Origin: Anthoceros angustus
Lineage: Eukaryota; Plantae; Anthocerotophyta
DNA: 64,000 nucleotides
Reading direction: 5' to 3'
NCBI GenBank assembly: GCA_010909165.1
Contig: MU008201.1
Coordinates: 1-64,000, forward strand
Shown here: one piece after another, positions 9,887 to 52,020 of the stretch
Position numbering within the stretch: the stretch's first letter is position 1
How the letters are laid out: each line of letters starts with the position of its first letter
Translations under genes and position numbers: made by a program
The notes under the pieces: generated by a model
The model's input: the letters and a program-made list of their open reading frames with translations, nothing else
Database searches by the model: none
What the model was told of the DNA's origin: nothing

Positions 9887-10030
9887 TGGAGCTTCCTGAG
9901 TTGGATTCTGCCGATGCTTATCGGCTGTTGTCATGCGGCGAGGTTGCGGGTTGAGGACGCTCTGCTGGCAGGGTACCATGGCAGGGTTGATGGAACTAAG
10001 CTGGTACCAAACTGGAAGGGCCATGGTAGG

Positions 10031-11484
<1,454 letters not shown>

Positions 11485-18480: not shown

Positions 18481-18678
18481 AAGCTTCTTGCGTGAGATGA
18501 TATTAGCACCTGGCTGCTGATGGAGGTCTATTCTTTCTCTCAGGGAGAGACAGGAGTTGGAGAGCAGGAAGGACAGTGAAGCTTCTTAAGTGAGATGATA
18601 TTAGCACCTGGTAGCTGATGGAGGTCTATGCTTCCTCTCAGGGAGAGACAGGAGTTGGAGAGCAGGAAGGACAGTGAA
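18481..18678. repeat. 98-bp near-perfect tandem duplication
   Basis: Units start at 18481 and 18579: AAGCTTCTT..GTGAGATGATATTAGCACCTGG...GAGAGCAGGAAGGACAGTGAA. Confidence 0.9.
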
Positions 18679-19576
18679 CACAGAAGGCAGCGACAAAGGA
18701 GGACGGCGAACAAAGAACGACAGTGAACAGAGTAGGACAATGAACAAAGATGGACAGCAAATAAAGCTGGACAGAGAACAAAGGAGGACAGTGCAGAGAG
18801 GAGGACATCGACAAAGAGTTCTGAGACAGGCAAAGGTTTGTGTTGGAGTGGCATTACGCATCACATGAACCCACAAATATATGGCAAATTTTTCCTTCTC
18901 ACTCTTGAGTAAATCGCATCAACTGTTATCGTCCAGCACCTGCTCTGAAAACCAGTCTGTCTGCGGCAGCCATCCATAATGGCAGCACCAGTGTGGGGAC
19001 CACGGAGCACTAGGGCTCCTTTCTCGCAAACGCCAAAACGTCAGTCTGCGTGTGCAATGAAAGGATGTCCTGTAAAGCATCTAAATGCCATCCAGATCGT
19101 ACACCTCTAGTATCACAATCCTCCCCGTCAGCATCACGCCTGCCAGCACACCACGTGTTGAACTACTCCAAATCTGACATGTCCGGTGTTGCTGTTGCCA
19201 TCCCAGCAGCCCCAAGACCAGTTTCAACGAGGCGTGCAACGACCAAAGACTCTACAGAGTCTAGACTCTCGGCGTCAAGAATTGGCATTTTCCAGCTTCC
19301 CTATATGAACATCTCACTCGTGATCAACAGAAGATTTTGGATAGACATCCCCGTGAGGAAAGACCTGTGATCACCTTAGGATATCGATTTTGGATAGACA
19401 TTCCGTGGAGCCAAGCTGCATGGATAGACATCCCGGTGAAGTCCGTTTGAGGAAACTTCTTTAACAGACGCAGGCAGCACGCAGATAAATTTCGCAAACA
19501 CACACTTGGTTTTCACTGTTGCGGACGCTTTGTCTCTTGCTTTTCATCTCTTCCGCTTCCGACACCAACTGTCATC

Positions 19577-20872
19577 ATGGCCCCTCCAGCTACGGACCTG
19601 AATTCGGCATCCAAGTTCAAAGTAGTGTTCGTAGGAGCTGGAGGTGTGAATTTCGGAAGTTTGGAAGGTCCATGGAACCATTCTGCGCGGCTGGAAAGGT
19701 GAGTTTCTTGTTCTGAGGCTGTTTCGAGGCTGCTCTGTTCTGCTCTGTTCCTTCTTGTCAAGCTCCCTGCTTGAACACGTTGTCGCTGCTTTTCTTACAG
19801 TATTCTCGGCAAGAGTCTGGAAGTGACAGCACTCGTCAGCCCCGCGGGTCGTGAAAAGGTCTTGGCTCTCAAACGATCGTCTCCCGCAGCTGCATCCTAT
19901 GCCAACACGAAGGAATACGACGATGTTTCAGACTTCCTCGCAGATCTGGCCTCCTCCCCCGACAGCAACTCCATCAAGCCCGACCTGGTGCTAGTCGGCG
20001 TGCCACCAGCATACCACGGCAACACCGCACCCGGAACCGACATCGAAGTCCAGCTTTCCAATTCCATCACCAACAACTTCGTCCTCTTCGTGGAGAAGCC
20101 GATGTCGAGCTCCCCGGTGCAGGACGTGAAGCTGGTAGGCAAGTACCTGGCGGAGCAACACCGCCTGGTGTCCGTGGGATACTTCATGCGCTACCTCAAG
20201 CTGGTGCAGACCATGAAGGACATCATCAGCAGCAACAAGCTGACGGTGATAGCCACAGTGGCCCGCTACACGTGCTGCTACGCCGCCATCGCCAAGAAGG
20301 AGTGGTGGATGAAGACCATCTCGTGCGGGCCGATTGTGGAGCAGGGCACGCACTTCTGCGACCTGTCTCGCTACTTCGGTGGCGACGTGGAGATCTCGAC
20401 TGTGCAGGCGCACGCGGTGGAGCACAACGAGGCGCCCGGGAAGCTCTCCAGCATCCCGATCGACGAGGCGAGCATCCCCGAGGAGGATCGCATCCCGCGG
20501 CTCACCTCGGCCATCTGGAAGTACAAGTCGGGCGCCGTGGGCTCCATCGTGCACGGCATCAACCTCCAGGGAGTCAAGTTCAACTGCGAGCTGGAAGTGC
20601 ATGCCGACGGATGGCTGCTGCACCTGGTGGATCCCTACCACTCGCCTCTGCTCAAAGTCCGGTCTCCTGCCAGCGACGAGCCCAAGGTCTTCACTGCCCC
20701 AGGCGATGATCCTTACCTGAATCAGATGCAGACTGTGGTTGCCGCTGCTCGGAATCCCGGCAATTCGACAGTCTTGTCCACCTGGGAGGACGCTGCCAAG
20801 ACCTACGAGCTCACCTGGGCCATCAGACATGCAAGCGAGGCTTCTTCTGGTAGAGGCAGCAAGTCTAATTAG
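19577..20872 (+). CDS. Gfo/Idh/MocA-type NAD(P)-binding oxidoreductase, fungal-like subfamily (397 aa, one intron)
   Basis: Exons 19577-19698 and 19801-20872 are in frame. Rossmann motif VVFVGAGGVNFGSLEGPWNHSARLE, LFVEKP, VSVGYFMRYL, GPIVEQGTHFCDLSRYFGG, ELEVHADG, DAAKTYELTWAIR. Confidence 0.9.
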
Positions 20873-21055
20873 GTAGACAGGGTACATGGGTGTCCATTTT
20901 GCTTTTGAATTAGGTCCGTTTTTTCCTTTTGCTGGATGAATACTATGCACCTATGTACATGGAATCGGGTCTCTCGTCCGGACACCCACATAAATACAAG
21001 AAATTTTCAGAGTTCACGATAGCATCTGCATAAGGCCAATCAAAGATTGAAAACG

Positions 21056-24000
21056 TCATTCATCGACGAAGTACTTGTAGCAAGCCCGGATGGACCTTGA
21101 GTCGGGTTCAAAAGAGGAACGGAAGGGGTTGTCAGCAGAAAGCGGAATTTGGAGTTGTCCGGAGGTTCGGTGATGGATAGGTGGGAGGGGAGAGGTTGGT
21201 GTATCTGTGTGAGCGGGTGATGGCTCTGTGGAGTCTGGACACACGAAATTTAGGCTCTCTAACCTAGAGAGCAGATTCTCTGTTCCGGTTTGAGGAGATG
21301 GAGAGGGGTCGAAAGATAGTGGGAGGCTGGTAAACAAGACACGCTGACCGTCTGATTCTTGGGTTTCTGATGATAGGTCATGGACACAGCTTGAACAAAG
21401 AGGGGATACAGATATTGGGAGGTCGCAAAGGAGATGGACTTCTGGATCATCCAAGCTTGCAACTTCAGAATCTGGAGTGGCTGCCACCCTTGTCACACCT
21501 GCTTCTTCGAAAGGGAAGTCGAAGTAGGCGCATCGTGTGCTCAGGTCGTCGGTCCAGAAGCTGTCTGACTCCTCCTGCCTTCGGTTTGTCCCGCTTTCAG
21601 AAACCTCAAGGGCAGGTGACGGAGAATCCTGCACAGTCAATGGCCGACTGCAAGCGGCCCACAAGCTTGAGGGTATGCAGTCAAAAGGAGAGGACAAGCT
21701 GGTGACACAGGGAGGGATTTGCCAAACTGCCCTAGCCACAACTTCAGCAAGGTCAGCCAAGACGCGATCTGCAATATCCTCGTACTCGTATTTGTCGTCG
21801 TTCAGTATACCATTGCTGTTGGTGTAGATCACAGCAGACAAGAAGAAGGACCGTTGTCTCTCAAGGTCAAATATGTACCTGCGTAGTGGTACAGATTGTT
21901 AGAGTGATACAGAATGTTTGGGCACTGCTGATCGCTGCATCACATGGAGATAAAAAGGAGACCATACGCGTTGTCAATTGTAAACCCGTATGCACGGCCG
22001 ATCTTGTTGTAGATACGTAAGGCTCCTTTTGCACGAACCCGTGAGAGGCCTGGTAAGAAAAACTGGAAACAGAACAAACAATGCGCAGATCCATGACTCA
22101 AGAGTTTCCACTGACTCTCCATGGACTGTCACAGACATCAACAAGAACCACTGAATTCGAAATCTATACCTTGCAATAATCGTCAGGGTAATCAGCCTTG
22201 TTATATTTCGGATTGCTGGAATCTGATGGGTACTGGCTCATGGCCTCCATCAGCATCATGCGTGTGCCGTCATTGAGCCTAAGTGGAGGTGAGTCTAACT
22301 TCCATCAGCCAAGAAATAGAGAGGTGTTATACACGGCTTCACTCCACGGCTTCTGAGCCTCCCACGAAAAGATAGGAAGCAGCAGGGTGCTCACCTCAAC
22401 ATCTCTCCGAACCAGCTTTACAAGCAGATTTTGCAAGTCTAGCAGACTCATGTAGTTCTTCTTTGAAAAGTCCATTGACTCTGGAACCTGGGAAAGCATG
22501 TCGGAAAACCGTGGCATGGTTAGCACATGCATTCAGTGCGTTATGGACTTGTTAAGCCCACAGAGTGATGCAGGCAGGAAATGAAGACATACCAGTTTCT
22601 CATCTTCCGTGACGTATGCAGTCCCCACATGCACTCCTGGCAAGGAGCTGTTTTCCGGAAGCACCAGGTTGCTCTTCTTGGGAGGCAGCGTAAGGTTAGT
22701 GGCCCCTAACTTCAAGCTCACCGGTTCGCAGTACTGGTTTTCTTCTGGTGTCAAGCACACAGAGAGTCGGTGTTGGAGCCTTGCACTCAACAAGCCAAGA
22801 CTCCACCTGCAGTGCACAGTGATTCATTTCGGCCAGAAATACTGGCACATCCAACTATTCCCGCCAGTGAGAGTGCCGAACACAATTTAACACTGCTCCT
22901 CACCAAGAAACATAACCGACAGTCTGTGACGAACCTACTCACATGGCTCTGTTCATGGAGTGGTGACCAACAAAGGTATACAGACGATTATATGCAGTGT
23001 TATCCGATACCTGGCAACATTTTCAACAGCACAATCACTATCAGAGGCATCGAAACACAGCTCCAGCTCAAGAAACAACCGAAACACACCTGCCACAACT
23101 TATACCAGGAAAAGCTTACGAATCTCATGTGCAATGGTGATGTTCTGCTGATCCAAGTTGGAAGGATCCACCTTCTCCTCTTCTGCTCCCTCAAAAAGAG
23201 GATAGAAGGAAATAGGAGTGGTGCAATTCACGTCTACAGCTGGAACCAAACCCTAAACCAATCAGCTCGGGAGCAGACACCAAACTCAATCATCAAGTTC
23301 CAGCTCCGAACCAAACACGGCCACACACCTAGCACCTCCTTCAGGTGTTTAACCTTCTGAACAGCAGCCACAGCGCCACAGAGCTTGATCGCACTGCACC
23401 AAACAGGCAGGCCTTGTTCACATGCATTGCCAAAATGAAATCCGACCAATTCCACCCACCACTCCTCTCCGCTACTCACCTGGCAGGATAGAAATACTCA
23501 TGATCCACACGGTAAGCGTGGCGCAGGAGCTGAGCAGGCCCAGCCCCGTCCCCCTCCACCACCTCCGACACTAGCACCTGGAACCTGAACGTGGTGGCCT
23601 TCTCCATGACACGCCCAAACATGGCAGGATGCGCATCCAGAACCCTCTCCAAGAAGCCGGGCCTCCCTTTCTCCCCCAACGCATGGCCCCCACCCCGCAT
23701 CTCCTCTTCCAGCAATTCTCTCCACTCCACCCTCCTGCCACAACCTCATCACTGCTCAAAATCCAACAAGAACATGCGCCCTGCCAGCACAGACCCCGAT
23801 GACATCTGCCAACACCCAGTGGCGAATCTCACTCCACTCCCCCGTCACTCAAAAACGAAGGTGAAATCCAGTCTGACTCGGAAAACAAGCACACCTTACC
23901 ACCTGTACGCGGTATCCACAGACCTCCGGGTCAGAGAAGCTGCCAACGCGATTCCTGTGGTCAAGCCCGTCAGAAGTAAAGTCCAATCTGTGCCCCTTGA

Positions 24001-24093
24001 AAAAATCAAGCCACGCCAGTCGCCAGTTACAGGCCGCATTAAATGGAGTCTGCAGTCAGTCACGCGACCAATTCGCACAGACGTCTGCCGCAT
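21056..24093 (-). CDS. Multi-exon serine hydrolase of the class A beta-lactamase / penicillin-binding fold, bacterial type, with N-terminal hydrophobic anchor and Ser/Pro/Asp-rich C-terminal extension
   Basis: About 10 GT-AG exons give RFQVLVSEV...YRVDHEYFYPAS|AIKLCGAVAAVQKV, IAHEIRKLFL|VSDNTAYNRLYTFVG, ESMDFSKKNYMSLLDLQNLL, MSQYPSDSSNPKYNKADYPDDYCK|FFLPG, LRIYNKIGRAYGFTIDNA|YIFDLERQRSFFLSAVIYTNSNGILNDDKYEYEDI. One junction (~22290) needs a 1-nt correction. Exon 1 (24093-23903) is inferred from phase compatibility. Confidence 0.85.
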
Positions 24094-24386: not shown

Positions 24387-25908
24387 CCAAACAATAACAT
24401 CTAGAGAGAAAAAGACATTCTTCGTTTTTTCTGTCCCCGCTTGAGGAATGACATGATAGCCGGAGTTCATGGGAACTCCATAGTAAAGTAATGAGGGTTT
24501 CTTCCTTTTTTGTCCTCCTTTTGGTCGGATACTACTCGGATCGTGGTAGCGATTCTTCCTTTTTTGTTCTCCCTTGAGGAGTAACATGGAGTAACATGGC
24601 TAAGCAACCTTCTCGCGGGATCACTATTGGGATGGTGGTAGCATGTTCGAATCTCACAGCCCACTGCGTTCGGGTGGAAAGATGGTTCCCTGCATTTTTG
24701 TCCTTCTTTGAGAAGTGACATAGTAATCAGGAGTTCATTGGAACTCCGTAGTTAAGCAGCCTTATGATCAGCTCTCTATTGAAATGAGGAACCACCTACT
24801 ACCGATTACTCCTTCCTAGCACTTGGTGACTACTGCGATGGGGTACCACCCATCGCCAAGTAGGTATTCTGGTCTACCTATTCTCCCTTGGTGATTATTG
24901 GGATGGGATACCACCCATCGCCTATTACTCCTTGCTGTTGGAATCATCCCGATGGATACACAACCCATCCGGTACACAACCCATCACCTCTTATACCCGG
25001 CCCTTGGTGGCATGCCTGTTCTAAGCCCTTCGAGATGCCTGATATATGATCTGAGTTGTAATGTCCTTTGGAGTGAAGCCCTTCGAGCTGCGTGATATAT
25101 GATTTTCGTTGTAAGGTCCTTTGGAGTCTCATAAATTATGTGGAATATAAATACTTGATCAATTTCACAGAAAAAGATGTCATAAATTATATGGAATGTA
25201 AATACTGGATCAATTATCTAGACAGTAACTATGATATATAATATTTATAATATATCTATATACCTATATAATAACCAACCGAAGAATCTTTTGGTTAGAA
25301 GAGTATAAGGAGTCGAGGAAGGCATCTGCGTCCGTTTTCGGGCTTTGGTTTTTCCATCGCGCCTGCCCCTCCCCTCGTGCGGATCTTGGGCGCTGTAAAT
25401 GTTTAGGAGTCGAGGACTCTTGGAGTAGGACGTTGAATTCCAATATATTCACATACATATAATGTTCTGTATTCACATACATATGTACCTAGTTAAAATT
25501 CCATGTCGTTGGTTCAACACGGTTGCCCATGTCAGAGCCCGCGACCCCATGAGTCACTGGTCAGTGGCTGTGTATCAATGGTGGCCCCATCCACGATCGG
25601 CTATTTGCTGACTTGGTCTGCGTCATCAAGCCAGCGCCTTCTTGTCCGACTCAAATGTAACCGGCTTGGAGGCTTGTGCCGGGGCAGCCGGCCGCATTGC
25701 GAGCGTCAGCTTCTACATGTTTGGCTTTGCACGTGTGCGGATTGGCTCGCGGCGGCATCCGCGCCGGGTTGGCGGATTGGTGTTTTAGAATCCGGAGCGG
25801 AGGAAGGGAAAATTTTGGTGCGCAGGCGTGCTGTGCAGGTGGTAGATCTTGAGCTGGAATTGGGAGCTGTATGTATCGTGCGTAGGAGGATTTGAAGCGG
25901 CGAGGAAG

Positions 25909-26775
25909 ATGTTGCAAGAATGTGTGGACAACTGCATGAAAATCTGCACTTGCGCGGGGAGGCAGGAGGCGGACAATCCGGTAGTGGTGCTGAGGAAAGA
26001 TGGCCAGGTGTCGGAGTTTCCCAGGAGGATCAGGTGCTCCGAGGTGCTGGCCGAAAATCCGCACTACAGAATTTGCCATGCCAGCTCCTTGCTGTTGAAG
26101 CAGAAGGGGCGGATACTGTCGAATGCCGCCATGTTGGAGCCGGGGGAGATCTACTTTCTTGTGCCACAGCCTGGGACGCCTGCAGCCGGCAAGGGGGCCA
26201 TGTCCAAGGGAGCGGATTCCTCCATGCATTTCATGATCCCTAAAGAGTATTTGGAGAAGATTGCTGGAGATTTCGCTAATTCTGCCAACGCTGCCAGATC
26301 TGGTGCTGGCAGGAGGAGAGTGAAGAAGGCTGCCTCTAAGGTGCAGGGTCTGAAGAGGTCCAGGTCGAAGAGCAACTTTGTTTCTTCTTTTGATTCGTCT
26401 ATGCAGTTTGTTGTACCGAAGGACATTTTGTCTAAGTCTGGCGAAGAGGCCGCTAGCGCTGCATCTGATTACGGATCAGGACTGGCTGCGGTTCCGAAGG
26501 CCAGACCTGTGCTGACCAGAAGTGCTACCATAGGGAAGGGTAGGCCTCAGATCAGGTTGAAGAGGAACAGGCGCGTCTGGGTGCCGCCTTTGGACACCAT
26601 CGCTGAAGGGAGCTCTGGCCGATCATCTCTGGCGTCCAGGGGACACAGCAGATCGTCGGGAAGGTCCTTTGAAGCCGCATCTTTTCGGGATCCTCACGGG
26701 AATGGGACATCGTTTAGCACGCTGGATGAGACTTTAAGAGAAGACGAGGATGTAGCCCTTGCCTCACAATCTTGA
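25909..26775 (+). CDS. DUF4228 (PADRE) domain protein, intronless
   Basis: CMKICTCAG...VVVLRKDGQVSEFPRRIRCSEVLAENPHYRICH...LEPGEIYFLVP, followed by a Ser/Arg-rich tail containing WVPPLDTIAE. Confidence 0.8.
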   Translation: MLQECVDNCMKICTCAGRQEADNPVVVLRKDGQVSEFPRRIRCSEVLAENPHYRICHASSLLLKQKGRILSNAAMLEPGEIYFLVPQPGTPAAGKGAMSKGADSSMHFMIPKEYLEKIAGDFANSANAARSGAGRRRVKKAASKVQGLKRSRSKSNFVSSFDSSMQFVVPKDILSKSGEEAASAASDYGSGLAAVPKARPVLTRSATIGKGRPQIRLKRNRRVWVPPLDTIAEGSSGRSSLASRGHSRSSGRSFEAASFRDPHGNGTSFSTLDETLREDEDVALASQS

Positions 26776-34709: not shown

Positions 34710-36671
34710 TTGATGGGTGTTGCTTCTTGTAGGATGAATGGAGAGGGACCCAAGATTCGTCAGTTGATGAAACGTTTGTGCCAGGAAGGACGGTTGGATG
34801 AGGCTTTAAGTGTCCTTCGCCTCATGGACCAGGAGGGCATTGTAGCTTGCAAGGAGACTTACCTTTCTCTGTTTCAGGGATGCATCAAAATGAGGGCCCT
34901 TGCGGAGGCAAGGCTAGTGCATGCCCACATTATCCAGAAGGGGTATGAAAGTGACCTCTTTTTGAGTAATTCAGTTGTCAACATGTTTGTGAGATGTGGA
35001 AGCTTTTCAGATGCTATGCAGGCTTTTAGCAGGTTACCTCGACGTAATGCTTTTTCGTGGACGGCAGTCATATCATGGTACAGTAACGGAGGCCAAGGTC
35101 GTGAAGCCTTGCTATGCTACCAGCAAATGCAGGTAGAAGGAATTGCACCAAGCAAGTATACCTTCCTCAGCGTTCTACGAGCCTGTGGCAGCCTAGAGGA
35201 TCTCGGTGAGGGTAGACGGATTCACAATGACATCCTCAAAAGTTGTTGTGAGGCAGATGTTTTTTTGGGAACTGCTCTGGTGGACATGTATGCAAAATGT
35301 GGAAGCATGGTGGATGCACATCAGGTATTCGACTCATTGGAACAGCCGGACGTTGTGGCTTGGACGGCAATGGTTGCAGGCTATGCTCAGCATGGCCAAG
35401 GTGAGAAGGCGTTGCAATTGTTTGCCCAGATGGAGGCACATGGTGTGAAACCAAATGATCGGACCTTTGTCAGTGTGCTCAAAGCGTGTGGCAGCCTTGC
35501 TGTGCTGGAAGAGGAGAAGCTGGTCAACGGAGAGCTGCTGAAGATGGATACTTTGCATAAAGTTAGGGTGATTCATGCTCAACTCGTCAACAGCTATTTT
35601 GAACGTGATGTGTATGTTTCTAACACTCTGATAGACTCGTATGTGAAATGTGGGAGCATGGCAAATGCGAGGCATGTCTTTGACAATGCACCCCAACGCA
35701 CTGTTGTATCGTGGACTGCACTGATTTCAGGATATGCTCAGCAAGAACAAGGGCAAAAGGCTTTGCAACTCTGGGCAGAAATGCAAGAGGATGGTGTGGA
35801 AGCAGATGAGGCTGCATTCCTCTGCTTGCTCAGAGCTTGCAGTCAAGTGGGCGCCCTGCAATATTGTTCTGAAGTTCATCGCAGTCTCCGTCAAAGCGCA
35901 GTTCAGCTGAGCCTGACAGTGTCAAACTGTCTTATCCACACATACGGCAGATGTGGGGCCATGGAGGAAGCCCAGGATGTGTTTAACAGCTTGTCTCATC
36001 CCAACATGGTGTCATGGACTGCTCTCATTGCAGGATACGCCTGGCAAGGGCATTACAACACAAGTCTGCAACGTTTTGATGAAATGAAACAGGCGGGCAT
36101 CCAGCCAGGTGAAGTCACTTTTCTGTCATTGCTTACAGCTTGTTGCCACACTGGCCTTGTGGATAAAGGCCTCGAGCTCTTTGTATCAATGTGCAAAGAC
36201 TACAGCCTGACTCCAACCATTCGACACCATGCTATCCTGGTTGATCTCCTAGCCCGTTCAGGACTGTTGAAACTGGCAGAAAAGTTCCTACTTTCAATGC
36301 CAGTGCAGCCTGATCTTGCAATGTGGTTGTCTTTGCTTTGTGCCTGCCGCAACTACAAGGAAGCGGAGATCGGCATACGGGCCTTCCGACATGCTGTGAC
36401 CCTGGAACCAGCTCAGAGCTCCGCTTACGTGCTGATGAAGGACATATATGCCGATGCTCAGATGTGGGACAACGTAAGGCTGATAGAGGACATGAGGACA
36501 CACGCAGGTGCATGGAAGCAGCCCGGGCAGAGCTGGATCGAGCACGAGGACAAGGTTCACGTGTTTGTAGTAGGAGACACATCCCACCTCCAAATTGTGC
36601 AGATACATGCAAAGCTGAAAGATCTAAGTGTGCTTCTTCAGGAAGGCAAATCAAGTTACTTTGTAGTCTAA
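34710..36671 (+). CDS. PLS-class pentatricopeptide repeat protein with E/E+ domain, no DYW
   Basis: Repeated P-L-S motifs (VFLGTALVDMYAKCG, VVAWTAMVAGYAQHG, TFVSVLKACG), then WLSLLCACR...AYVLMKDIYA...WKQPGQSWIE...HVFVVGD. Confidence 0.93.
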   Translation: MMGVASCRMNGEGPKIRQLMKRLCQEGRLDEALSVLRLMDQEGIVACKETYLSLFQGCIKMRALAEARLVHAHIIQKGYESDLFLSNSVVNMFVRCGSFSDAMQAFSRLPRRNAFSWTAVISWYSNGGQGREALLCYQQMQVEGIAPSKYTFLSVLRACGSLEDLGEGRRIHNDILKSCCEADVFLGTALVDMYAKCGSMVDAHQVFDSLEQPDVVAWTAMVAGYAQHGQGEKALQLFAQMEAHGVKPNDRTFVSVLKACGSLAVLEEEKLVNGELLKMDTLHKVRVIHAQLVNSYFERDVYVSNTLIDSYVKCGSMANARHVFDNAPQRTVVSWTALISGYAQQEQGQKALQLWAEMQEDGVEADEAAFLCLLRACSQVGALQYCSEVHRSLRQSAVQLSLTVSNCLIHTYGRCGAMEEAQDVFNSLSHPNMVSWTALIAGYAWQGHYNTSLQRFDEMKQAGIQPGEVTFLSLLTACCHTGLVDKGLELFVSMCKDYSLTPTIRHHAILVDLLARSGLLKLAEKFLLSMPVQPDLAMWLSLLCACRNYKEAEIGIRAFRHAVTLEPAQSSAYVLMKDIYADAQMWDNVRLIEDMRTHAGAWKQPGQSWIEHEDKVHVFVVGDTSHLQIVQIHAKLKDLSVLLQEGKSSYFVV

Positions 36672-38749: not shown

Positions 38750-41100
38750 GATGCAAAAAGCGAATTATCTTATATCTAAGTTAGCAAGTTAAGAGGTTAG
38801 TGGTAGTGATGCTTTACTTGGATCTTAAGAAAGTTAGTCTACTTTAAGCAGTTACTTAGGAATGAAATAAGCCTCCCTATATAAAGCATCGAGTTAGACT
38901 AAGGGGGTCATTCCCTAGCACTTGAGCCACACTCTTTTTTGGCAAGATTAAGGCCTTATGAGAAGAGGTGCCTAAAGGCTATGGGAGCCTAGAGTGCATG
39001 TGTGCTTAGAGGAGAGCTTTGAGGAGGAGATCAATAGGAGAGAGCTTCAGGTGTAGGTAGCAGCCAACACTCTGTGATCTCTCTTGTTGTTTTGTTGTAC
39101 TCGTGCTATTGTAAAGAACAGTAGTGGAGGTACTGCCTACGAGACGTCCTTGGGAGGACAACAAAGGTTGTTTCTTTTAACTGTGTGCTTGCAAAAAAGG
39201 GGTGTTACTTGTGGTATCAGAGCTTACTATTGTTTAGCTAGAGATGGCCTATTCGAGAGAATTACAAGGCGGAGCAGAGAGAATAAAGCGGAAAAGAGAT
39301 ACCTTCACTCTTGTCTTAGATACTAGGTTTGAAGAGCCGCATGTGGAATCACCACAATTTGAAACGGCACAGGCAGAATCCTCCAGTCCGAGGATGATCT
39401 CCATGACTAAACAGGAGCTGCAAGCCATCATACGAAGATCGGTGAAGGAAGCACTAGACGAACTTGGCTTTGGAAAAAGAAAGCTCGTAGAAGACAAGAT
39501 GGGAGAGGAGCAAAAGCAAGAATCTTCCTTCCCATGGAGAGAGAGAAAAGAAAAGACCGACGATGTCGCCTTCCAAAAGTTCAGCATTCATCCCCTGAAT
39601 AAGTATCAAGACGAGAGAGATGCGGAGATGATCAACTCCTTGTTATTCTCCTTTGAATCTTTTCTTAAGGCAGCTGGGATTGCTCAAGAAGATTATTTGA
39701 ATTATATCGATACTTTCTTGGATGGGTATGCTTGCACCTTGTGGAAAAATCACCTTGAAGCTGTGAAGCAAGGTAATAGGAGGAACAATATCACCAGCTG
39801 GGAAGAATTTAAGAGTGCATTGATTCAGAAGCTCCAGTTCCAGCCTACTAATTCATCTAGACCAAGAAGAGAGTTAGAAAACGTAAAGGGAATGGAACCA
39901 GATCAGCAGTATGCGGATAACTTTAGTCAAGCTATCTTGCAATGTCCTAACTTGCATGCGCAGGAAGGTGATGATCTCAATAGATTTGTACAAGGACAAA
40001 GGTGGGTTGTTGACAAAGTTGAGTTGTCGAAAGCTCAAACACTGCAAGATGCTATTATAGGTGGAGATACGATATCAAGCACTCAAGATGCTATTATAGG
40101 TGGAGATACTATACCAAACACTCAAGATGTTATTACAGGTGGAGATGCGATACCAGACACTCATCGTTATCGTATTGAGGAGTCTCAGGCCCTTGTGTCC
40201 ATAGGGAGAAGGTATCCTAGGGCAAGGGGAATAGCCACCAACATTGGCAAAGGTAGAAGAACTAATGAGAAGGTTGGTAGAGGAAGAGGAAGGGCCAAAG
40301 GAGCTAGTAGAGGCCGTGGAAGCCAAAGGACAACAAGCCCTCAATTTGGCTTGTGCTTCAGTTGTGGAAATCCGGGACATTTTGCAAGAGACTGTTTGCA
40401 GGCTAGGGATCAATCATTGAATGTGATAAATGCCAATAATCCTCCAACACAGAGACTAACACCATAATTTTTCAAAGGGGGTATATGCATGATAGGGGCT
40501 TTGTGCCTTATATACTCCTAAGGAGGTTTCTCATGGGTCCTAAATCACTTATTATTTAGGATTTTGGAAATTCTTGCAAATTCTAAATGATGCTCGTGGT
40601 CACATGTTGTTCGTGAGTCTCCTAGCATCAATTAGGATGACATTGGTTTGAGGGAAAGTGGAGCCTTATGAAGGTAACATGTATATGGAATACTGAAAGA
40701 GTAAACAAAGGTTGATTAAAGGGATTGGAGTGAGGATGGTAGAGTTCTCCCTTTATCTAAGATAGCAAGTTAAGAGGTTAGATTATTTAAGTTAGCAAGT
40801 CAAGGGGTTAGAGAGGTAAAGATAGTGAGGTTTATTTACAGTTTAAGAAAATTAGTCTACTTTATTCAGTTACTTAAGCATGAAGTAAAAGAAGTCATAG
40901 ATTAGTTGTAGATAATCATTCCCTAGCACTACAAACTACACTCTCGTTGGGAAGGATTGAAGTGTTTAGAGGCTCTAGGAACCTAGAGTGCATGTATGCT
41001 TTGAGGAGAAGATTGAGGAAAGAGAGCTGAGTACTGGCCATAACTTTAGGTGTATAGAGCGTATAACAGCGAGATGCTGCCTACGAGTCTTCCGCTACAT
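38750..41100 (+). mobile_element. Gag-only LTR retrotransposon (TR-GAG-like) with diverged LTRs
   Basis: LTR-like direct repeats at ~38750-39200 and ~40740-41100 share TATCTAAG.TAGCAAGTTAAGAGGTTAG, TTAGTCTACTTTA, TCATTCCCTAGCACT and CCTAGAGTGCATGT. tRNA-iMet PBS TGGTATCAGAGC at ~39212. No pol sequence. Boundaries are approximate. Confidence 0.75.
39244..40467 (+). CDS. Retrotransposon Gag protein with CCHC zinc knuckle
   Basis: 407-aa open frame with retrotransposon-gag features (FLDGYACTLW, ITSWEEFKSAL), an RG-rich stretch and CFSCGNPGHFARDC. Confidence 0.85.
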   Translation: MAYSRELQGGAERIKRKRDTFTLVLDTRFEEPHVESPQFETAQAESSSPRMISMTKQELQAIIRRSVKEALDELGFGKRKLVEDKMGEEQKQESSFPWRERKEKTDDVAFQKFSIHPLNKYQDERDAEMINSLLFSFESFLKAAGIAQEDYLNYIDTFLDGYACTLWKNHLEAVKQGNRRNNITSWEEFKSALIQKLQFQPTNSSRPRRELENVKGMEPDQQYADNFSQAILQCPNLHAQEGDDLNRFVQGQRWVVDKVELSKAQTLQDAIIGGDTISSTQDAIIGGDTIPNTQDVITGGDAIPDTHRYRIEESQALVSIGRRYPRARGIATNIGKGRRTNEKVGRGRGRAKGASRGRGSQRTTSPQFGLCFSCGNPGHFARDCLQARDQSLNVINANNPPTQRLTP

Positions 41101-43696: not shown

Positions 43697-46600
43697 ATGG
43701 AGCTGGATGGGAGCTCGCCGTATGCGATGGAAGACACGGGTCGTGAATTCCTGGCTCGCGCTCCTGGGTACATGAACGCCGAGGGGGATGCCGGGGGCGG
43801 AGGAGCAGCTCGTGCGGGCGGAGGAGACGTGGCGCAGTCTGTGGAGGGACGTGGGCGGGATGCTGGAGGAGGCGGGAGTCCAGGAGCTGCTGTGGCAGGA
43901 GCCCCGAGCGTGGGTCAGGCTGCAGCCGCGGGGAGAAACGTTGCATTCGGAGAGGCTGCCCCAGATGGTGCTGCAATGTGGGTTAAGGTGTAATCGAGTT
44001 GTCTTCTCGTAGTGGATGCTTAGATTTTACTTTCTGCATACGGGGGTTGAGAGTGTTATCTGAATCTCACTAGGTAGATGGAATGCATGCGCTGGTTGAG
44101 GGCCTGATCACACGACATGTGAGCAGAACTGTGCAAAAGCTGCTTCGTACGAGTTTTGCTTGAGGCTTGTGTGATTTTCCCGACCTGTCACGCCCTGCTC
44201 ATCCATAAGTGGGCAGGCAGTCAAGGAATGGATCTGGTAATCACGGGATCCCTCCCCGAGGACCCATCCTGGCTGTGATGGGAAGTCACGGTGTTCCGTC
44301 TCCGGAGTCCCTGACATTCTGGGCGGTGATTGGCAGTGGAGGGGGAAGTACCAAGCTGGCATCAAGTGCAGCAGCAATGACTGCAAGAAGGCCACGGTCA
44401 AGGCTGCACCTACGCACCGAGCTAAGACGTATATCGTGGTGTATATTCCCAGCAGCGGGAGCTGGTTGTGGGTGTCTGCCCAGAATGTCGTTCCTATCGA
44501 ACAGAACCCGGTGCCCTTGACAGCCGGGACACATGAAAGTGGGCGGATGTTTGTGAGGGACACAAATATTCCGAGGTACCACGTGATGTTCTTGTTGGAG
44601 CATGAAATCCTTGACATCAGTGACAAGCTCCCGCTTCAGGTAGGGTCTGAGCTCAGCCTGCTGTTTAGAGATGCGCCATACGCCTGGTGTTCAGTGGAGC
44701 ACAATTATGAAATGTGTTATCTCATCGCTTTACTGGACCTGCTCTCTGAAGCTCTATTGCCGGTGTTGCCAGGCTGTGCAGGTGTCTGCCCGTAATGTTA
44801 AGGTTTGGCAAGCTTTTGCTTTGGAAGCTGGGAAATCAACTACCTACTCGGAAGTTGGCTCGTTGCTGCCAAAGCTGCATGCTGTATGCCATCCAACATC
44901 TTGTTGTTTCAATTGTCGTAACTTTTGTCTGTCTAAAGGCATGTGTTTGAGCTGTGTCAATGTGCTGCAGAAGATTTTGCCAAGCTTTATCAGCCCATCT
45001 TGGATGAAAGATCGGTACTCAGGCTGGAAAGTAGAGTGTGAAAGCTGTGTGAGTGCAACCTCTGTAGAGGATCTGACACAGGTGGGATATCTGACTCATC
45101 TCCATGAACTTCTCATTCTTCAATCTTTTCTCTATGTCCAGTGGGAGTTTCCTGCTGATGTTGTAACATAACCGTGGCTGGACGTGTCTGGACAACGTGT
45201 GAAACCTAATGTATCTGCTCAGAAAAAGTGTTCCTTTGTCTTCCAGTGGTGCTAACATGTATGTGGTTCTGGGTACTGGCAGGAATTAATTGATAAAGTC
45301 ATCTGGGATAAGGTCCACAAACTCTGGAACACATCTGACCAAACAGCTCTGACAAGTAGTGAGTGGCAAAACTGGAAGGCAGGGACATTTAAGGAGCTAC
45401 GTAATCTGTCTTCTGCTGTAGATATTATTTTGGACCATCTGTCACCAAGCTTGCCCGGAACACCAAGTGTTCCTTCTAAGCCAAGAGCAAGTTCTGGCAT
45501 TCAGCGTGAAGGTGGGAGTTCCCCAGTAGGGTTACCGAAGGAGCTGGGTGTTGCCCTTGGTGGAGCTCAACCATCACCGCTAGACCGTCAAAATCTGCCC
45601 CATGCTTCTGCAAGCACTGTCGCAGGGTTCTCAGTCCCCAAGTCTTTCAATGAGTCAGCAGAGCAGATATGCATTGGTATAACCAAACATGGAGTAAGGT
45701 GCACCCACAAAACCAAGGGAGGAGCTCTTTATTGTGGTAAACATGTCCATCCTGGTGTTACATCTGAATCTCTTGACACAGACACCCAGGAAGATCCTGG
45801 CCAAGACAGAACACTATTTGCAGGAGCTCAGCTGAGAGAGATGGTTAACCAAGCATCTAGTCTGCCTGAAGAATTGGCAAAGCCTTCTGATCTTGTAAAG
45901 GCAGGTGGTACTTGCAGAGGCTGGTCGAAGAGGACGAATGCTCAGTGTGCACGCAGAGCAGGAAAACATTCTCTTTATTGTGAGAAACATGTCCGAACTG
46001 CTAATGATAGGGACTCCGATGATTTGAGCAACAAGATGAACAGCAACGGGTTTGCAGATAATGCAGCTAATGGCTTAGCCTACCAAGAGAGGAAGGACTA
46101 TGATAGGGCCAGAGACATGGTCAATAATTATTTATTACAGAATCTAGGGGACTTGCCCGAAGATGCTCCAACTTTTTCCTCAAAGACGCAACAGAATTTT
46201 CAAGCAGAAGGCCTTGATTGGATTCTGCAGGAAGCTTCCAAAGATCTCCCGATGGCAGTGAAATTGTCAAAGGTGGCTGCTTTGGAGCAGAAAAGGCTCA
46301 GGAAAGAAGCAGAGTGTTGGGCAGGGGAAACACGGTATTCAGTCACTGACTTGAATGAATGTGACCGTGGTGAGGCTATTTTCACAGTTGGGGCGGGTCC
46401 TCCAACTGGCAACAGTGATTATGATGGGAAAGCCATTGTACCAAGTGAGCCAAAATTCTCTGTTTCTGAAGACACATTGGGTGAGCCCTGTGTCATTGTT
46501 ACTGCCCAGAAGGCAATGTTGCATTGTGCCTTGTGCGAGAGGGAGTTCAACCAGAAGGCGGAGCTCAGTAGGCACTGGTCTCTGCAACATGAGAAGGAAG

Positions 46601-49158
46601 CTTCCCTTTTCCTGAAGAGCCTCTCCTGCAGGACCTGTCAATTTGAAGCATCCAGCTTGCCGGTGATGCAAAGCCATTCGCAGGAGCAGCACCGAGATCT
46701 GCCTTTGGAGTATCTATGCTGGTGGATCTGTATCTCATGTGAGAGCTCGTTTGCAAATTGGGAGGCATTGTGGCATCATGTCACCCTGTTGCATGCCGAT
46801 CAGCTGATGCATCATTCCCAGGCCATTGGTGGTTCCTCTTGGAAGCCACGGCATTGCTCGTTGGATGGTGTGCAGCAGGAAGCTGGTTGGAAGTGTGACA
46901 CATCCTATACAGAGATGGCCACTGGCCTGGAATTGTTCGCAGAATATGGGGCTCCTGTGGATTCTTCCAATGTTAATGGTGGCTTGGAGATGCTTGGCGC
47001 TTCGTCTGATACTCAAATGCCTTCATCACATAATCCACCGGCAGCGCATCGGGGCAGAGGTAGGGGTAGACCTAGGGGGAGGGCCAGGGGAAGAGATAGA
47101 CCTAGAGGCCGGAGCAGGGGCACAGTTAGAAGGTCAGACCTTGTGGATGGTGTACAGCAAGACATTTTTGTAAAGAGAACGAAGTTAAACCCAAGTCCAC
47201 AAGGCTGTGTCATGGTTAATGAGAAAGATACTGGACTCGCCAAGACAGATCTAAATCCATCGGGTGCCATCGCAGACATGGGACCTGTACCACAACACAA
47301 CATTGAGCAAGGTGCCGCAGGGGAGGAAACTGCATTGCCAGGTTGTCATGAAGGTGTCGAAGCGATGAGGGATTTCAAACCCTCGACGCGGGATATGGAA
47401 ATGGATGGGCAGCGAGTTGTAAATAGGAACAGTTTGGGTGGGGGTGTAGGACATTTTCTTTCGGAACAGGAGCTTAGATTATCAGGGATACTAGCTGATT
47501 TACACTTTCCATCAAGGAATGCTTCGGAAGTCTTGCTCTGTGAGGACATGAGTCATGGGCTAGAGCCTTTGCAGGTGCCTTGTGTTGTTGACCGAGATGT
47601 GTTGGACGTACTCTTTGATGGCCCCCTTTCGCATGATGAGAAGCAACGCAAGATATCAGAGCTTACTTCATGGAAGAACTTTGTCTATGTCATCAAGCGA
47701 TCTCTTGATCCATCGTTGGGCATTGACACAAAGGTAGTGTGTCGAGTGGAGACATGATGCCAAACTTCCTCAAGGGAACTTGTTATGACCTTTAACTTGT
47801 GGGTGAAGCTCCTGCTTAGAGTAGCTTTTATGATATGTTCGTTGCTGTTGTGCAGGATTTTCAGGTGGGATGTTCTTGTCCAATGGGGAAATGTGTGCCT
47901 GAGCACTGTGACCATGTCAAAATCTTCGACAATGACAATTGTGCTGCTTGTGACCTGCATGGACGTCCTATGCATGGCAGGTTCCCATACGACGAAGACG
48001 GTCGGATAATTCTCCAGGTAAGGGGAATGTGGTTTCACGGGCCACTCAGCTACTCTCTCCTGGTTGACTTGCATCTCAGTGAGTATTATTCCTTTGATGA
48101 AAACCTGAATGGAATGAAACTGCAGGAGGGTTTCTTGGTGTACGAATGTAATTCAAGCTGTCACTGCCTGGAAGATTGTCAAAACAGGGTCTTACAGAAA
48201 GGAGTCCAAGTGAAGCTTCAAGTTTACAAAACGAGACATAAGGTACTGTTACGTAGTTTGTGTCCAAGCACCCGGAACCTGGACGATTTTGCATGGCAAG
48301 TTTGCTGCACATGGGCTGGGCTGTCTCATCATGAGACTCTGCTGTAGGGCTGGGCTGTCAGGGCTGCTGAACCAATTCCTCTAGGAACTTTCGTGTGTGA
48401 GTACGTTGGGGAGGTGCTAAGTGACAAGGAGGCAAACAAGAGAGGTGAAAGGTATGCTGCTGCCTTTTCAGTTTGTCCCATTTTCGGGCTGAGTGATTTA
48501 TGCTCTCCCAGGGAAGCGGGGCATGGGATTTTTTGCTTACGGGCAAGGCTCTCACTTCTCCGCAATCTTAGTTGGATTGTTTGATTAAATGATTGAGATG
48601 GATTGCACTTGAATACTAGGAATGGAATCCTGTGCAGGTACGACCAATTGGGCTGCAGCTACTTGTATGATATTGACGTCCACCTTGATACTTCCGGGAG
48701 GGCGAACAACAGAATACGTCCTTATGTAATAGATGCAACGCGCAATGGAAATGTTTCCCGCTTTATAAATCACAGGTAAACCTTTTTGCATGAGATGTCT
48801 CTGTCCTGTTACGCGAAAATGAATGTCAAGCATGACAGATTTCTTGTTGCAGTTGCTCTCCGAACCTTGTAAATTACCAGGTTCTTGTCGAAAGCATGGA
48901 TTGCCAGCTTGCCCACATAGGCCTGTATGCCAGTCGCGATGTAAGTTAACTGAGTGGAAGATGTGCCCTACTTGTAGGCCTACTTCATTTTCTGCCTGAA
49001 AATCATTCTTCAATGATGCCTACTGAAAGCCATCTTCAATGCTTCTGCAGATCGCTGTCGGGGAAGAGCTAGCGTATGACTACAGATACAAACTGCTTCC
49101 CGGAAAGGGCTGTCCATGTCAGTGTGGATCTGCGAACTGTCGCGGAAGGCTGTATTAG
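43697..49158 (+). CDS. SUVR5: SUVR5-like histone-lysine N-methyltransferase (C2H2 zinc fingers, pre-SET, SET, post-SET)
   Basis: AMWVK|[12 protein letters not shown]2H2 fingers (CALCEREF...HWSLQH, CRTCQF...[14 protein letters not shown]...HVTLLH), [59 protein letters not shown], and C-terminal [15 protein letters not shown]. Confidence 0.9.
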
Positions 49159-50397: not shown

Positions 50398-52020
50398 ATG
50401 GCATTCTCAGGCAGAGCTATGGCAGGATTGGCGCTAGTAGTGGCTGTGAGTGCTGTTTGATACTGGTCTTTTAATGCAAGTTTTGGACTCGAGTTTGATT
50501 CGTTTGGATGGTCGCTGAACTGGTTCTGCATTATCCACATGTGTTGCAGATCCTGGCGATTGCTGCAGGGGGCTCTGCAGGCTTGGAGGTGAGTAGTCTA
50601 GACTGCCCAGGTCGAGAGTGTTGTGATTTGGGGGCCATTGTAGCGGGTTGATGCTGATGCTGACGTTGAGAATGCGCGGGTGTGCTTGAAATTGAGCAGG
50701 GCTTGTCAAGCGGCCCACGGAAGTTGCTGGCCAGCAATTACGAGTGGTACAACCGTGAGAAGCACGAGGTGCGCGACGCCGCCCTGTCCAAGCCACTGGA
50801 CGTGGAAGACGATGACAACGACATGCTCGTCTACGGCAGGTATACGAGTTCAAGGTCTGTGAAGCTGGAGACGGAAGAGGACTCTAAGAAACACGGTCAG
50901 GAGGAAACGAAGGGAGAGGAGAAGAAGGGCGAGGACGAGAAGGAAAAGGAGGAACAGAAGAAGGAGGAGCAAGGGAAGAAGGAAAAGGAGGAAGAGAAGA
51001 AGAAGAAGGGCGGGGAGCAAAAGGTGAGCAAGACTCAGGAGGAACAGGACAAGGGGCGAGAGAAGAAGGAGGAGGAGGAAGAGAAGACGAAAGACGAGAA
51101 GAAGAACGACGAAAAGAACAAGGAGCAAAAGAAGGAGGAGGAAGAGGAGATTAAGAAGGAGGAGGAAGGGAAGAAGGAGGAAGACGAGAAAAAGAACAAG
51201 GAGCAAAAGGAGTTAGAGAAGAAGAACAAGGACCACAAAGAGCAAGAGAAGAGCTACGAACAAAACAAGGAGCAGGAGAAGAAGGGGGAAGAGGAGAAGA
51301 ACAAGGTCCAGAAGGGGGAAGAGCAGAAGGAGCAAGAGAAGAAGGGGGAAGAGGAGAAGAACAAGGACCACAAAGACGAAAAGAACAAGGAGCAAGAGAA
51401 GAAGGGGGAAGAGGAGAAGAACAAGGACTATAAAGACGAAAAGAACAAGGAGCAAGAGAAGAAGGGGAAGAGGAGAAGAACAAGGACTATAAAGACGAAA
51501 AGAACAAGGAGCAAGAGAGGAAGGGGAAGAGAAGAACAAGGACCACAAAGACGAAAAGAACAAGGAGCAAGAGAGAAGAAGGGGAAGAACAAGGACCACA
51601 AAGACGAAAAGAACAAGGAGCAAGAGAAGAAGAAGGGGGAACAGAACAAGGAGCACGAGAAGAAGGGGAAGAGGAGAAGAACAAGGACCACAAAGACGAA
51701 AAGAACAAGGAGCAAGAGAAGAAGGGGGAACAGAACAAGGAGCAAGAGAAGAAGGGGAAGAGGAGAAGAACAAGGACCACAAAGACGAAAAGAACAAGGA
51801 GCAAGAGAAGAAGGGGGAAGAGGAGAAGAACAAGGACCACAAAGACGAAAAGAACAAGGAGCAAGAGGAGAAGAAGGGGGAAGAGGAGAAGAATAAGGAC
51901 CACAAAGACGAAAAGAATAAGGAGCAAGAGAAGAAGAAGGGGGAAGAGGAGAAGAAGGAGCAGGAGAAGAAGAAGGAGGAAGAGCAGAAGCGGGGAAGAG
52001 GAGAAGAAGCAAAAGGGTAA
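50398..52020 (+). CDS. Secreted, highly charged Lys/Glu-rich tandem-repeat protein of unknown function
   Basis: Phase-0 exons 50398-50445, 50550-50588 and 50700 onward give MAFSGRAMAGLALVVA|ILAIAAGGSAGLE|GLSSGPRKLLASNYEWYNREKHEV..., then K/E repeats. Frameshifts fall in A/G homopolymers of the repeat. Confidence 0.72.
51260..51960 (+). repeat. ~60-bp coding tandem repeat encoding ~QEKKGEEEKNKDHKDEKNKE
   Basis: GAAGGGGGAAGAGGAGAAGAACAAGGACCACAAAGACGAAAAGAACAAGGAGCAAGAGAA recurs about 10 times with variants. Confidence 0.9.

What the first reader, a model, noticed from the sequence alone, without database searches (positions are those of the whole stretch)
19577..20872. Fungal-type NAD-binding oxidoreductase in a plant genome: candidate fungus-to-plant gene transfer
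Seen: an intact 397-aa two-exon gene. From recall, the motifs GAGxxNFGSxEGPWNHSxRLE, ARYxCxYxAIAKxxWW, GPIVEQGTHFCDLSRYFGG, IPxxxRIPRxTSAxWKYxxGAVG and YxDAAKTYExTWAIR closely match an uncharacterised fungal Gfo/Idh/MocA subfamily that I do not know from flowering plants. Inference: horizontal acquisition, possibly from a soil or symbiotic fungus, for sugar or secondary-metabolite redox chemistry.
Basis: partly seen in the sequence, partly recalled or inferred. Interest (0 to 1): 0.7.

Follow-up and report, generated by a model that had tools for sequence, protein, structure and literature searches.

The report
Published fungal-origin dehydrogenase gene in hornwort
This is a real, spliced and transcribed plant gene for a sugar-type NAD(P) dehydrogenase that a hornwort ancestor took from a chytrid-like fungus, but the transfer was already published for Anthoceros angustus in 2020.

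Summary
A two-exon, 397-codon gene lies at 19577-20872, with a 102-nt GT-AG intron at 19699-19800. RNA contigs of the window's own species and of a relative splice exactly there. DNA and RNA contigs tie the gene to its plant neighbour.

The protein is a Gfo/Idh/MocA oxidoreductase of Pfam family PF08635. Its closest relatives are Spizellomycetales chytrids (62% identity). An ML tree puts it inside the fungal clade (100/100) and with the chytrids (100/98). An AU test rejects grouping it with green-algal homologues (p = 1.3e-5).

So transfer from a fungus is supported, but it is not new. Zhang et al. 2020 (Nature Plants, Fig. 4b) report PF08635 "NAD-binding dehydrogenase" genes as fungus-derived, intron-bearing and duplicated in Anthoceros angustus. 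The scan also noted a second copy on another piece of this genome (s1-291294).

Small additions:
- The intron sits at the same position and phase as in three chytrid genes and one basidiomycete gene, so it probably came with the gene.
- The otherwise near-invariant Asp of the cofactor site is Ser here.

Substrate and physiological role remain unknown.

The parts
19333..19445 (+). Three direct copies of a ~30-nt motif (core GGATAGACATCCC..GTG) in the promoter and transcript-start region
   Evidence: the repeat finder. The RNA contig of the own species begins at 19421, inside the third copy. Function not tested.
19421..19576 (+). 5' untranslated region (minimum extent)
   Evidence: RNA contig X1 record 3 starts at 19421. 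There is an in-frame stop upstream of the ATG.
19577..19698 (+). Exon 1 coding part: 40 codons plus 2 nt. It holds the dinucleotide-binding loop GAGGVNFG and the motif EGPWNHSARLE.
   Evidence: It aligns end to end with the N-termini of fungal and algal homologues.
19699..19800 (+). Single intron, 102 nt, GT-AG, phase 2, directly after ...HSARLE
   Evidence: Spliced out in RNA contigs of the own species and of relative C, and retained in one contig of relative E. Same position and phase as introns in Spizellomyces punctatus, two Phlyctochytrium arcticum genes and Serendipita.
19801..20872 (+). Exon 2: 1 nt plus 356 codons plus stop. It holds the rest of the Rossmann domain, the EKP motif, the PF08635 C-terminal domain and the E-x3-H catalytic pair.
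   Evidence: Pfam; alignment A1; AlphaFold model with pLDDT 91.6; Foldseek.
20873..21055 (+). 3' UTR and short spacer shared with the convergent neighbour gene
   Evidence: The RNA contig runs on without a break from 19799 to 21875. A DNA contig covers 20750-22419.
21056..24093 (-). It anchors the transferred gene in plant DNA.
   Evidence: At least 7 CT..AC joints (GT-AG on the minus strand) in RNA contigs of three species. The same RNA contigs in relatives C and E join both genes, so the adjacency is conserved.

Best explanation
The gene encodes a probably cytosolic NAD(P)-dependent dehydrogenase of the Gfo/Idh/MocA superfamily, PF08635 subfamily. An ancestor of several Anthoceros-type hornwort species acquired it as genomic DNA from a fungus close to the Spizellomycetales chytrids. 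It is now an ordinary, expressed nuclear gene. Shown here: the gene model, its splicing and transcription, its physical link to plant genes, conservation at about 95-96% nucleotide identity in at least two related species, the fold, the conserved catalytic motifs and the fungal/chytrid phylogenetic position. Inferred: the chemistry and the role. By analogy with the family, the Lys of EKP (residue 140) and the Glu221/His225 pair would oxidise a secondary hydroxyl of a sugar, sugar derivative or cyclitol, or reduce the matching ketone. A stress-related role is suggested only because the fission-yeast protein SPACUNK4.17, taken here to be a family member, is the most strongly H2O2-induced Atf1/Pcr1-dependent gene. 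The single intron was most likely inherited from the fungal donor. The Asp-to-Ser change at the end of beta-strand 2 may have relaxed or switched cofactor preference towards NADP(H).
For: Gene model and splice. Plant context in the window: a PLS-type PPR with E and E+ motifs, a PADRE domain and a Root_cap domain. DNA contigs bridge 20750-22419, and RNA contigs of three species join the gene to the spliced neighbour. Family: PF08635 at 1e-67 plus PF01408. Fold: model pLDDT 91.6, pTM 0.90. Best solved folds: glucuronide-3-dehydrogenase, glucose-fructose oxidoreductase, levoglucosan dehydrogenase and NAD-dependent sulfoquinovosidase, at E about 1e-15 and TM about 0.68. EKP and IVEQGTH are conserved across the family, and EKP aligns with that of inositol dehydrogenase. 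Origin: the best hits are Spizellomyces sp. 'palustris' 62%, S. punctatus 58% and Gaertneriomyces 57%, then Dikarya at about 50%. Green-algal homologues are about 36% identical. Careful ML tree: fungi plus window 100/100, chytrid clade plus window 100/98. AU test of window plus chlorophytes: p = 1.3e-5. Intron at the same site and phase in 3 chytrid genes and Serendipita, and absent in Cryptococcus, Saitoella and the green alga Myrmecia. Published precedent: PMC7027989 Fig. 4b and Supplementary Fig. 86. SPACUNK4.17 is ranked first among H2O2-induced genes in PMC2905393 Table 2.
Against: The AU test does not reject a position outside all sampled fungi (p = 0.096) or outside the chytrid clade (p = 0.196). 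The donor is therefore 'chytrid-like', not pinned down. Hornwort proteomes appear to be missing from the protein collections: no self hit and no paralogue were found. Many hits are unnamed metagenome or Logan proteins, so absence from other streptophytes is not proven. The family does occur in green algae. GC3 of exon 2 is 0.79, unlike the sampled chytrid genes (0.44-0.70) and unlike the neighbouring plant ORFs (0.45-0.62). This is unexplained. No member of PF08635 has a known substrate. I did not test directly that SPACUNK4.17 carries PF08635. That rests on the name 'UNK4.17-like' given to PF08635-bearing mollusc proteins.
Confidence: 0.85

Rival explanations
1. Vertical inheritance: an old eukaryotic gene kept in hornworts and fungi and lost in almost all other plants.
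For: The family is old and widespread, occurring in bacteria, green algae, invertebrates, a stramenopile and fungi. The AU test does not reject a position outside all sampled fungi (p = 0.096).
Against: The green-algal copies belong to the other deep clade (100/100). Joining the hornwort gene to them is rejected (p = 1.3e-5). Identity is 62% to a chytrid against about 36% to green algae. The intron site is shared with fungi and not with the green alga examined. No streptophyte is named among the best 120 hits of either search.
Confidence: 0.05
2. Transfer from a fungus, but from a lineage other than Spizellomycetales (an unsampled early-diverging fungus, or a stem lineage). The intron was gained independently in the plant at a favoured site.
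For: The window's place within the chytrid clade is weakly resolved (86/78; AU p = 0.196). Two unnamed Logan proteins, P0004 and P0122, also sit in this clade. The intron position also occurs in a basidiomycete, so it does not identify chytrids.
Against: The five closest named proteins are all Spizellomycetales. A random intron gain would hit one of the 2 intron sites of the nearest relatives with a chance of about 2 in 1191 coding positions, or about 2 in 83 if only sites after AG are allowed.
Confidence: 0.09
3. Contamination or chimeric assembly: fungal DNA wrongly joined to plant DNA.
For: The protein looks fungal, and its GC3 (0.79) differs from that of its neighbours.
Against: Independent short-read DNA contigs cover 18568-20302 and 20750-22419. 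RNA contigs of three species link the gene to the spliced plant neighbour. Orthologues at about 95-96% identity exist in related species. Identity to any known fungus is only 62%.
Confidence: 0.01

Closest known systems
NAD-binding dehydrogenase (PF08635) genes of Anthoceros angustus reported as fungus-derived HGT (Zhang et al. 2020, Nature Plants 6:107, Fig. 4b; probably AANG003219, AANG003233 and AANG012156 of Supplementary Fig. 86)
   Same: Same Pfam family and same fungal affinity. The published genes have introns, are flanked by plant genes, have transcript support and exist in more than one copy per genome. The scan noted a second copy on another piece (s1-291294).
   Different: I could not match the window to a particular AANG gene. 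The gene table is cut in the held supplement and the organism names of the runs are coded. It is probably not AANG003233, because the SDR gene listed just before that gene (AANG003230) is not in the window. The shared intron position and the Asp-to-Ser change do not appear in the parts of the paper I could read.
Chytrid PF08635 proteins (Spizellomyces sp. 'palustris' P0001, S. punctatus SPPG_04130 P0002, Gaertneriomyces P0003, Phlyctochytrium arcticum P0005 and P0012)
   Same: 57-62% identity over exon 2. The catalytic block IVEQGTHFCDLSRYFGGD is identical to that of P0001. P0002, P0005 and P0012 have a phase-2 intron directly after ...RLE.
   Different: The chytrid proteins keep Asp at the end of beta-strand 2 where the hornwort has Ser. 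S. punctatus has an N-terminal extension of about 25 residues and a second intron. GC3 is 0.44-0.63 against 0.79.
[quoted passage not shown]
   Same: Apparently the same family: PF08635 proteins of molluscs are named after it, and S. japonicus P0115 is a member at 49% identity. It is the only relative with functional hints, being the top H2O2-induced Atf1/Pcr1-dependent gene (PMC2905393).
   Different: No enzymatic function is known. Stress induction in a yeast says little about a hornwort. I did not test its membership directly.
Solved Gfo/Idh/MocA sugar dehydrogenases (glucuronide-3-dehydrogenase 8tdi, glucose-fructose oxidoreductase 1ofg, levoglucosan dehydrogenase 6a3i, inositol dehydrogenase 4mio)
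   Same: Two-domain fold (TM about 0.68), the EKP lysine and an acid-x3-His catalytic pair.
   Different: Only 12-18% identity. The sequence-profile match to solved structures is weak (best E = 5e-6, limited to the EKP region). Substrate cannot be transferred.

Membership tests
Gfo/Idh/MocA oxidoreductase superfamily | N-terminal Rossmann domain with a glycine-rich dinucleotide-binding loop | tested here: met
   Exon 1 has VVFVGAGGVNFG. PF01408 hits exon 2 at E = 5.3e-7. The model shows an alternating beta-alpha N-domain.
Gfo/Idh/MocA oxidoreductase superfamily | EKP motif with the catalytic lysine | tested here: met
   FVEKPM at exon-2 residues 96-101. E98-K99-P100 are invariant in alignment A1. 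The motif aligns with EKP of inositol dehydrogenase 4mio.
Gfo/Idh/MocA oxidoreductase superfamily | C-terminal alpha/beta domain with an acidic residue and His or Tyr four positions apart | tested here: met
   IVEQGTH: E180 and H184 are invariant in alignment A1 (45 sequences, all fungal or unnamed) and are kept in nearly all of the 41 rows from fungi, algae, animals and bacteria. PF22725 hits at E = 1.2e-6.
Gfo/Idh/MocA oxidoreductase superfamily | Overall fold like solved members | tested here: met
   Foldseek against the PDB gives 406 matches at E <= 0.001. The top matches are all Gfo/Idh/MocA enzymes, with TM 0.62-0.70.
Gfo/Idh/MocA oxidoreductase superfamily | NAD(P)-dependent oxidoreductase activity | not testable with these tools
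   Needs an enzyme assay.
Pfam PF08635 (ox_reductase_C) subfamily | Full-length match above the gathering score | tested here: met
   226.7 bits against a cut-off of 22.5, covering profile positions 1-142 of 142.
Horizontally acquired gene (fungus to plant) | Nested within the donor group in a supported tree | tested here: met
   Fungi plus window 100/100 and chytrid clade plus window 100/98. Window plus chlorophytes is rejected at p = 1.3e-5. However, placement as sister to all sampled fungi is not rejected (p = 0.096).
Horizontally acquired gene (fungus to plant) | Absent from the recipient's wider kin (other streptophytes) | tested here: inconclusive
   No streptophyte is named among the best 120 hits of either search. 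But only 120 hits are shown, many are unnamed, and hornwort proteomes themselves seem absent from the collection.
Horizontally acquired gene (fungus to plant) | Integrated in recipient DNA, not contamination | tested here: met
   DNA contigs bridge to the neighbour. RNA contigs of three species join both genes. Plant-specific families (PPR-E+, PADRE, Root_cap) are in the window.
Published Anthoceros angustus PF08635 HGT genes (Zhang et al. 2020) | The genome is Anthoceros angustus and the gene is one of the listed AANG models | tested here: inconclusive
   Run and organism names are coded. Other agents' notes call this genome Anthoceros (angustus), but I did not check that. The features match: PF08635, introns, plant neighbours, transcripts and more than one copy.

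The most novel reading that the evidence does not exclude
The gene's only intron is the donor's own intron, an old fungal intron position kept in Spizellomyces, Phlyctochytrium and Serendipita. In that case the hornwort received genomic DNA rather than a processed transcript from a Spizellomycetales-like chytrid, and the plant spliceosome has processed a fungal intron ever since. After transfer the enzyme lost the near-universal Asp of the cofactor site (now Ser54), which hints at a switch towards NADP(H) and a new role in the plant.
Probability: 0.45. Interest if true: 0.45.

Novelty: already known. Interest (0 to 1): 0.3.

Why it matters
Fungus-to-plant transfers are few and disputed. A 2025 reassessment (PMC12711439) reports a relatively high share of refuted cases among hornwort candidates. 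This case stands up to independent checks: splicing, linkage to plant genes in three species, topology tests and a shared intron position. It is therefore a sound example, and the intron gives a rare hint that genomic DNA with an intron was transferred. It opens no new question, because the transfer is published and the enzyme's substrate is unknown in every organism.

Tried and rejected
- **Paralogues in the window:** tblastn of the exon-2 protein found only the gene itself.
- **Self or hornwort hits:** none appeared in either protein collection, so no within-hornwort tree or dN/dS could be made.
- **Naming the organism:** the names of the sequencing runs are coded.
- **Matching to an AANG gene:** the held supplement of Zhang et al. 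has Table 31 cut off. PPR lists and one tandem-gene entry only argue against AANG003233.
- **Verdict of the reassessment paper:** its held supplement lists AANG003219 with recipient 'Anthocerotophyta', but the verdict column was not in the stored part.
- **Intron as a chytrid-only marker:** rejected, because Serendipita (Basidiomycota) has it too.
- **High GC3 as a donor signature:** rejected, because the chytrid genes have lower GC3.
- **Gene structures not obtained:** exact mapping failed for Microbotryum P0006, and no gene record was found for the scallop protein P0147.
- **Function from sequence libraries:** NCBIfam and PDB sequence searches gave only weak hits around the EKP motif, so no specific function could be transferred.
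- **Joined protein:** All searches, the fold and the trees use exon 2 (356 of 397 residues). Exon 1 was compared separately.

Full report
**Observation.** The gene is there as described. Exon 1 runs from the ATG at 19577 to 19698. A 102-nt GT-AG intron (GTGAGT...TTACAG) follows, and exon 2 runs from 19801 to the stop at 20870-20872. The two exons sum to 1194 nt, which is 397 codons plus the stop. The intron is phase 2: AG|T encodes Ser41. The fifth begins with W, not Y (WEDAAKTYELTWAIR). Exon 2 (window:19802-20869, 356 residues) was used for all searches, the fold and the trees, and the 40-residue exon-1 peptide was compared separately.

**Is the gene real, and is it in plant DNA?** Yes on both counts.
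- *Own species, RNA.* One RNA-derived contig (2582 nt, no mismatch) begins at 19421, skips exactly the 102 nt and runs on into the 3' end of the convergent neighbour, whose own introns are also removed.
- *Own species, DNA.* DNA contigs from the same sample contain the intron (18568-20302) and bridge the 3' end to the neighbour (20750-22419).
- *Relatives.* Two related organisms (coded C and E) have RNA contigs about 95-96% identical over the coding region. C shows the same splice. One contig of E retains the intron although the neighbour's introns are spliced. In both, the same contigs link this gene to the neighbour, so the arrangement predates the split of these species.
- *Plant families in the window.* It also encodes a PLS-class PPR protein with E and E+ motifs (34710-36668), a PADRE-domain protein (25849-26772) and a Root_cap-domain ORF (2044-2652). 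From general knowledge these are plant families.

Contamination or a chimeric join is therefore excluded.

**What the protein is.**
- *Family.* Pfam gives PF08635 (ox_reductase_C) at 1e-67 over the whole model, plus the Gfo/Idh/MocA Rossmann domain PF01408.
- *Fold.* An AlphaFold model built on 45 aligned homologues is confident (pLDDT 91.6, pTM 0.90). Its best solved neighbours are all Gfo/Idh/MocA sugar dehydrogenases: glucuronide-3-dehydrogenase, glucose-fructose oxidoreductase, levoglucosan dehydrogenase, NAD-dependent sulfoquinovosidase, scyllo-inositol dehydrogenase and 1,5-anhydrofructose reductase. These match at TM about 0.68 but only 12-18% identity.
- *Motifs.* The family hallmarks are present and conserved: the glycine-rich loop in exon 1, EKP (Lys140 in full-length numbering) and IVEQGTH (Glu221/His225).
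- *Mechanism.* NAD(P)-linked oxidation of a secondary hydroxyl of a sugar-like substrate, or reduction of the ketone, is an inference from the fold. No PF08635 member has a known substrate.
[quoted passage not shown] I infer its membership of this family from names and did not test it.
- *Cofactor site.* The Asp that ends beta-strand 2 in nearly all members, from bacteria to fungi, is Ser here (ALVSPAG). In Rossmann enzymes that Asp usually selects NAD over NADP, so a shift in cofactor preference is possible. This is untested.
- *Location.* The protein lacks the N-terminal extensions of many fungal homologues, so it is probably cytosolic. This is an inference.

**Where the gene came from.**
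- *Closest relatives.* In a 5.8-billion-protein collection the best hits are Spizellomycetales chytrids: Spizellomyces sp. 'palustris' at 62%, S. punctatus at 58%, Gaertneriomyces at 57% and Phlyctochytrium at 54%. Basidiomycota and Taphrinomycotina follow at about 50%. No plant name appears among the 120 hits listed. Any plant hit would therefore have E above 2.6e-96 against 2.6e-139 for the best fungus. That gives an alien index of at least about 99, with the caveat that hornwort proteomes seem to be absent from the collection.
- *The family is not fungus-only.* Representative and follow-up searches found it in trebouxiophyte green algae (Apatococcus, Myrmecia, Trebouxia), a raphidophyte, molluscs, krill, a sponge and bacterial MAGs.
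- *Tree.* In a careful ML tree (41 rows, 391 columns, LG+C20+F+G4), these non-fungal sequences form one clade and all fungi plus the window gene form the other, both at 100/100. The window gene sits in an 8-row clade with the five chytrid proteins and two unnamed Logan proteins (100/98).
- *Topology tests.* Forcing the window gene together with the green algae is rejected (delta lnL 83, p-AU 1.3e-5). Placing it outside all sampled fungi costs 18 lnL units but is not formally rejected (p = 0.096). Placing it outside the chytrid clade is not rejected either (p = 0.196).

The direction, fungus to plant, is well supported. The donor is 'Spizellomycetales-like' and not resolved further.

**The intron.** I mapped the exact exon structure of homologues on their genomic loci.

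| Homologue | Introns | Intron directly after ...RLE, phase 2? |
|---|---|---|
| Window gene (hornwort) | 1 | yes |
| S. punctatus P0002 | 2 | yes |
| Phlyctochytrium arcticum P0005 | 1 | yes |
| Phlyctochytrium arcticum P0012 | 1 | yes |
| Serendipita P0011 (Basidiomycota) | 9 | yes |
| Spizellomyces sp. 'palustris' P0001 | 0 | no |
| Gaertneriomyces P0003 | 0 | no |
| Unnamed Logan protein P0004 | 0 | no |
| Cryptococcus P0032 | 10 | no |
| Saitoella P0009 | 1 | no |
| Myrmecia P0284 (green alga) | 10 | no |

The exon-1 peptide aligns with each of these homologues so that its last residue falls on the RLE. A random gain would hit one of the two intron sites of the nearest relatives with a chance of about 2 in 1191 positions, or about 2 in 83 if only sites after AG count. 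The simplest reading is that the intron came with the gene, which means genomic DNA was transferred. It is an old fungal intron position, not a chytrid-specific marker.

**Is it new?** No. The only paper in the library that mentions PF08635 is the Anthoceros angustus genome paper (Zhang et al. 2020, PMC7027989).
- Its Fig. [quoted passage not shown]
- The text lists Chytridiomycota among the fungal donor groups and says these genes 'underwent subsequent gene duplications'.
- Supplementary Fig. 86 places three genes among plant genes and notes that they have introns. I infer these are AANG003219, AANG003233 and AANG012156.
- The scan's own notes list a second 'fungal-type Gfo/Idh/MocA oxidoreductase' on another piece of this genome (s1-291294). 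Other agents call the genome Anthoceros (angustus).

I could not verify the species name myself because run names are coded. The timing and pattern of the runs and every gene feature fit that species. Even if the window came from a sister species, this would be the same published transfer.

**Unexplained points and limits.**
- GC3 of exon 2 is 0.79. This is above the neighbouring plant ORFs (0.45-0.62) and above the chytrid homologues (0.44-0.70).
- One relative's RNA contig keeps the intron.
- The age of the transfer within hornworts, the enzyme's substrate and its role are all open.
- Trees rest on exon 2 only.
- The protein searches list only the best 120-150 hits and hold many unnamed sequences.

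Noticed in passing
window 19333-19445: Three direct copies of a ~30-nt motif (core GGATAGACATCCC..GTG) lie just upstream of and across the transcript start of the transferred gene. A relative's RNA contig has a loose end with the same motif. This may be a promoter element that the plant supplied.
   Followed up: partly
window 50900-52010: A strongly purine-rich stretch (GC skew 0.42, AT skew 0.52) with about 12 copies of a 60-nt unit, inside a 404-codon ORF (50682-51896). It would encode a Glu/Lys-rich 20-residue repeat. There is no Pfam hit.
   Followed up: partly
window 19699-19800, in relative organism E (run X21): The RNA contig of this relative retains the 102-nt intron of the oxidoreductase, while all introns of the neighbouring gene on the same contig are spliced. 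Read through, the retained intron gives a stop right after codon 41.
   Followed up: no
window 39244-40467: A 407-codon ORF with retrotransposon gag and a CCHC zinc knuckle, probably part of an LTR retrotransposon.
   Followed up: no
window 9914-11140: A GC-rich (0.60) stretch with long ORFs on both strands (407 and 369 codons). The 407-codon ORF, the only one of the two scanned, has no Pfam hit. Nature unknown.
   Followed up: no
window 45430-47757: A 775-codon ORF with weak C2H2 zinc-finger matches. It could be a transposon-related or a host zinc-finger protein.
   Followed up: no
loci L003 (Logan SRR10674624) and protein P0122: Two unnamed proteins fall in the chytrid clade with the hornwort gene. 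P0004 lies on a contig with HOOK, tetraspanin and XTBD genes, so it comes from an unidentified opisthokont, probably an unsampled early fungus.
   Followed up: no
proteins P0165, P0282, P0284, P0287: Among green algae, the PF08635 homologues that carry names are all terrestrial or lichen-associated Trebouxiophyceae. They group with a raphidophyte, next to animal and bacterial sequences, so their own history (vertical or transferred) is unclear.
   Followed up: no
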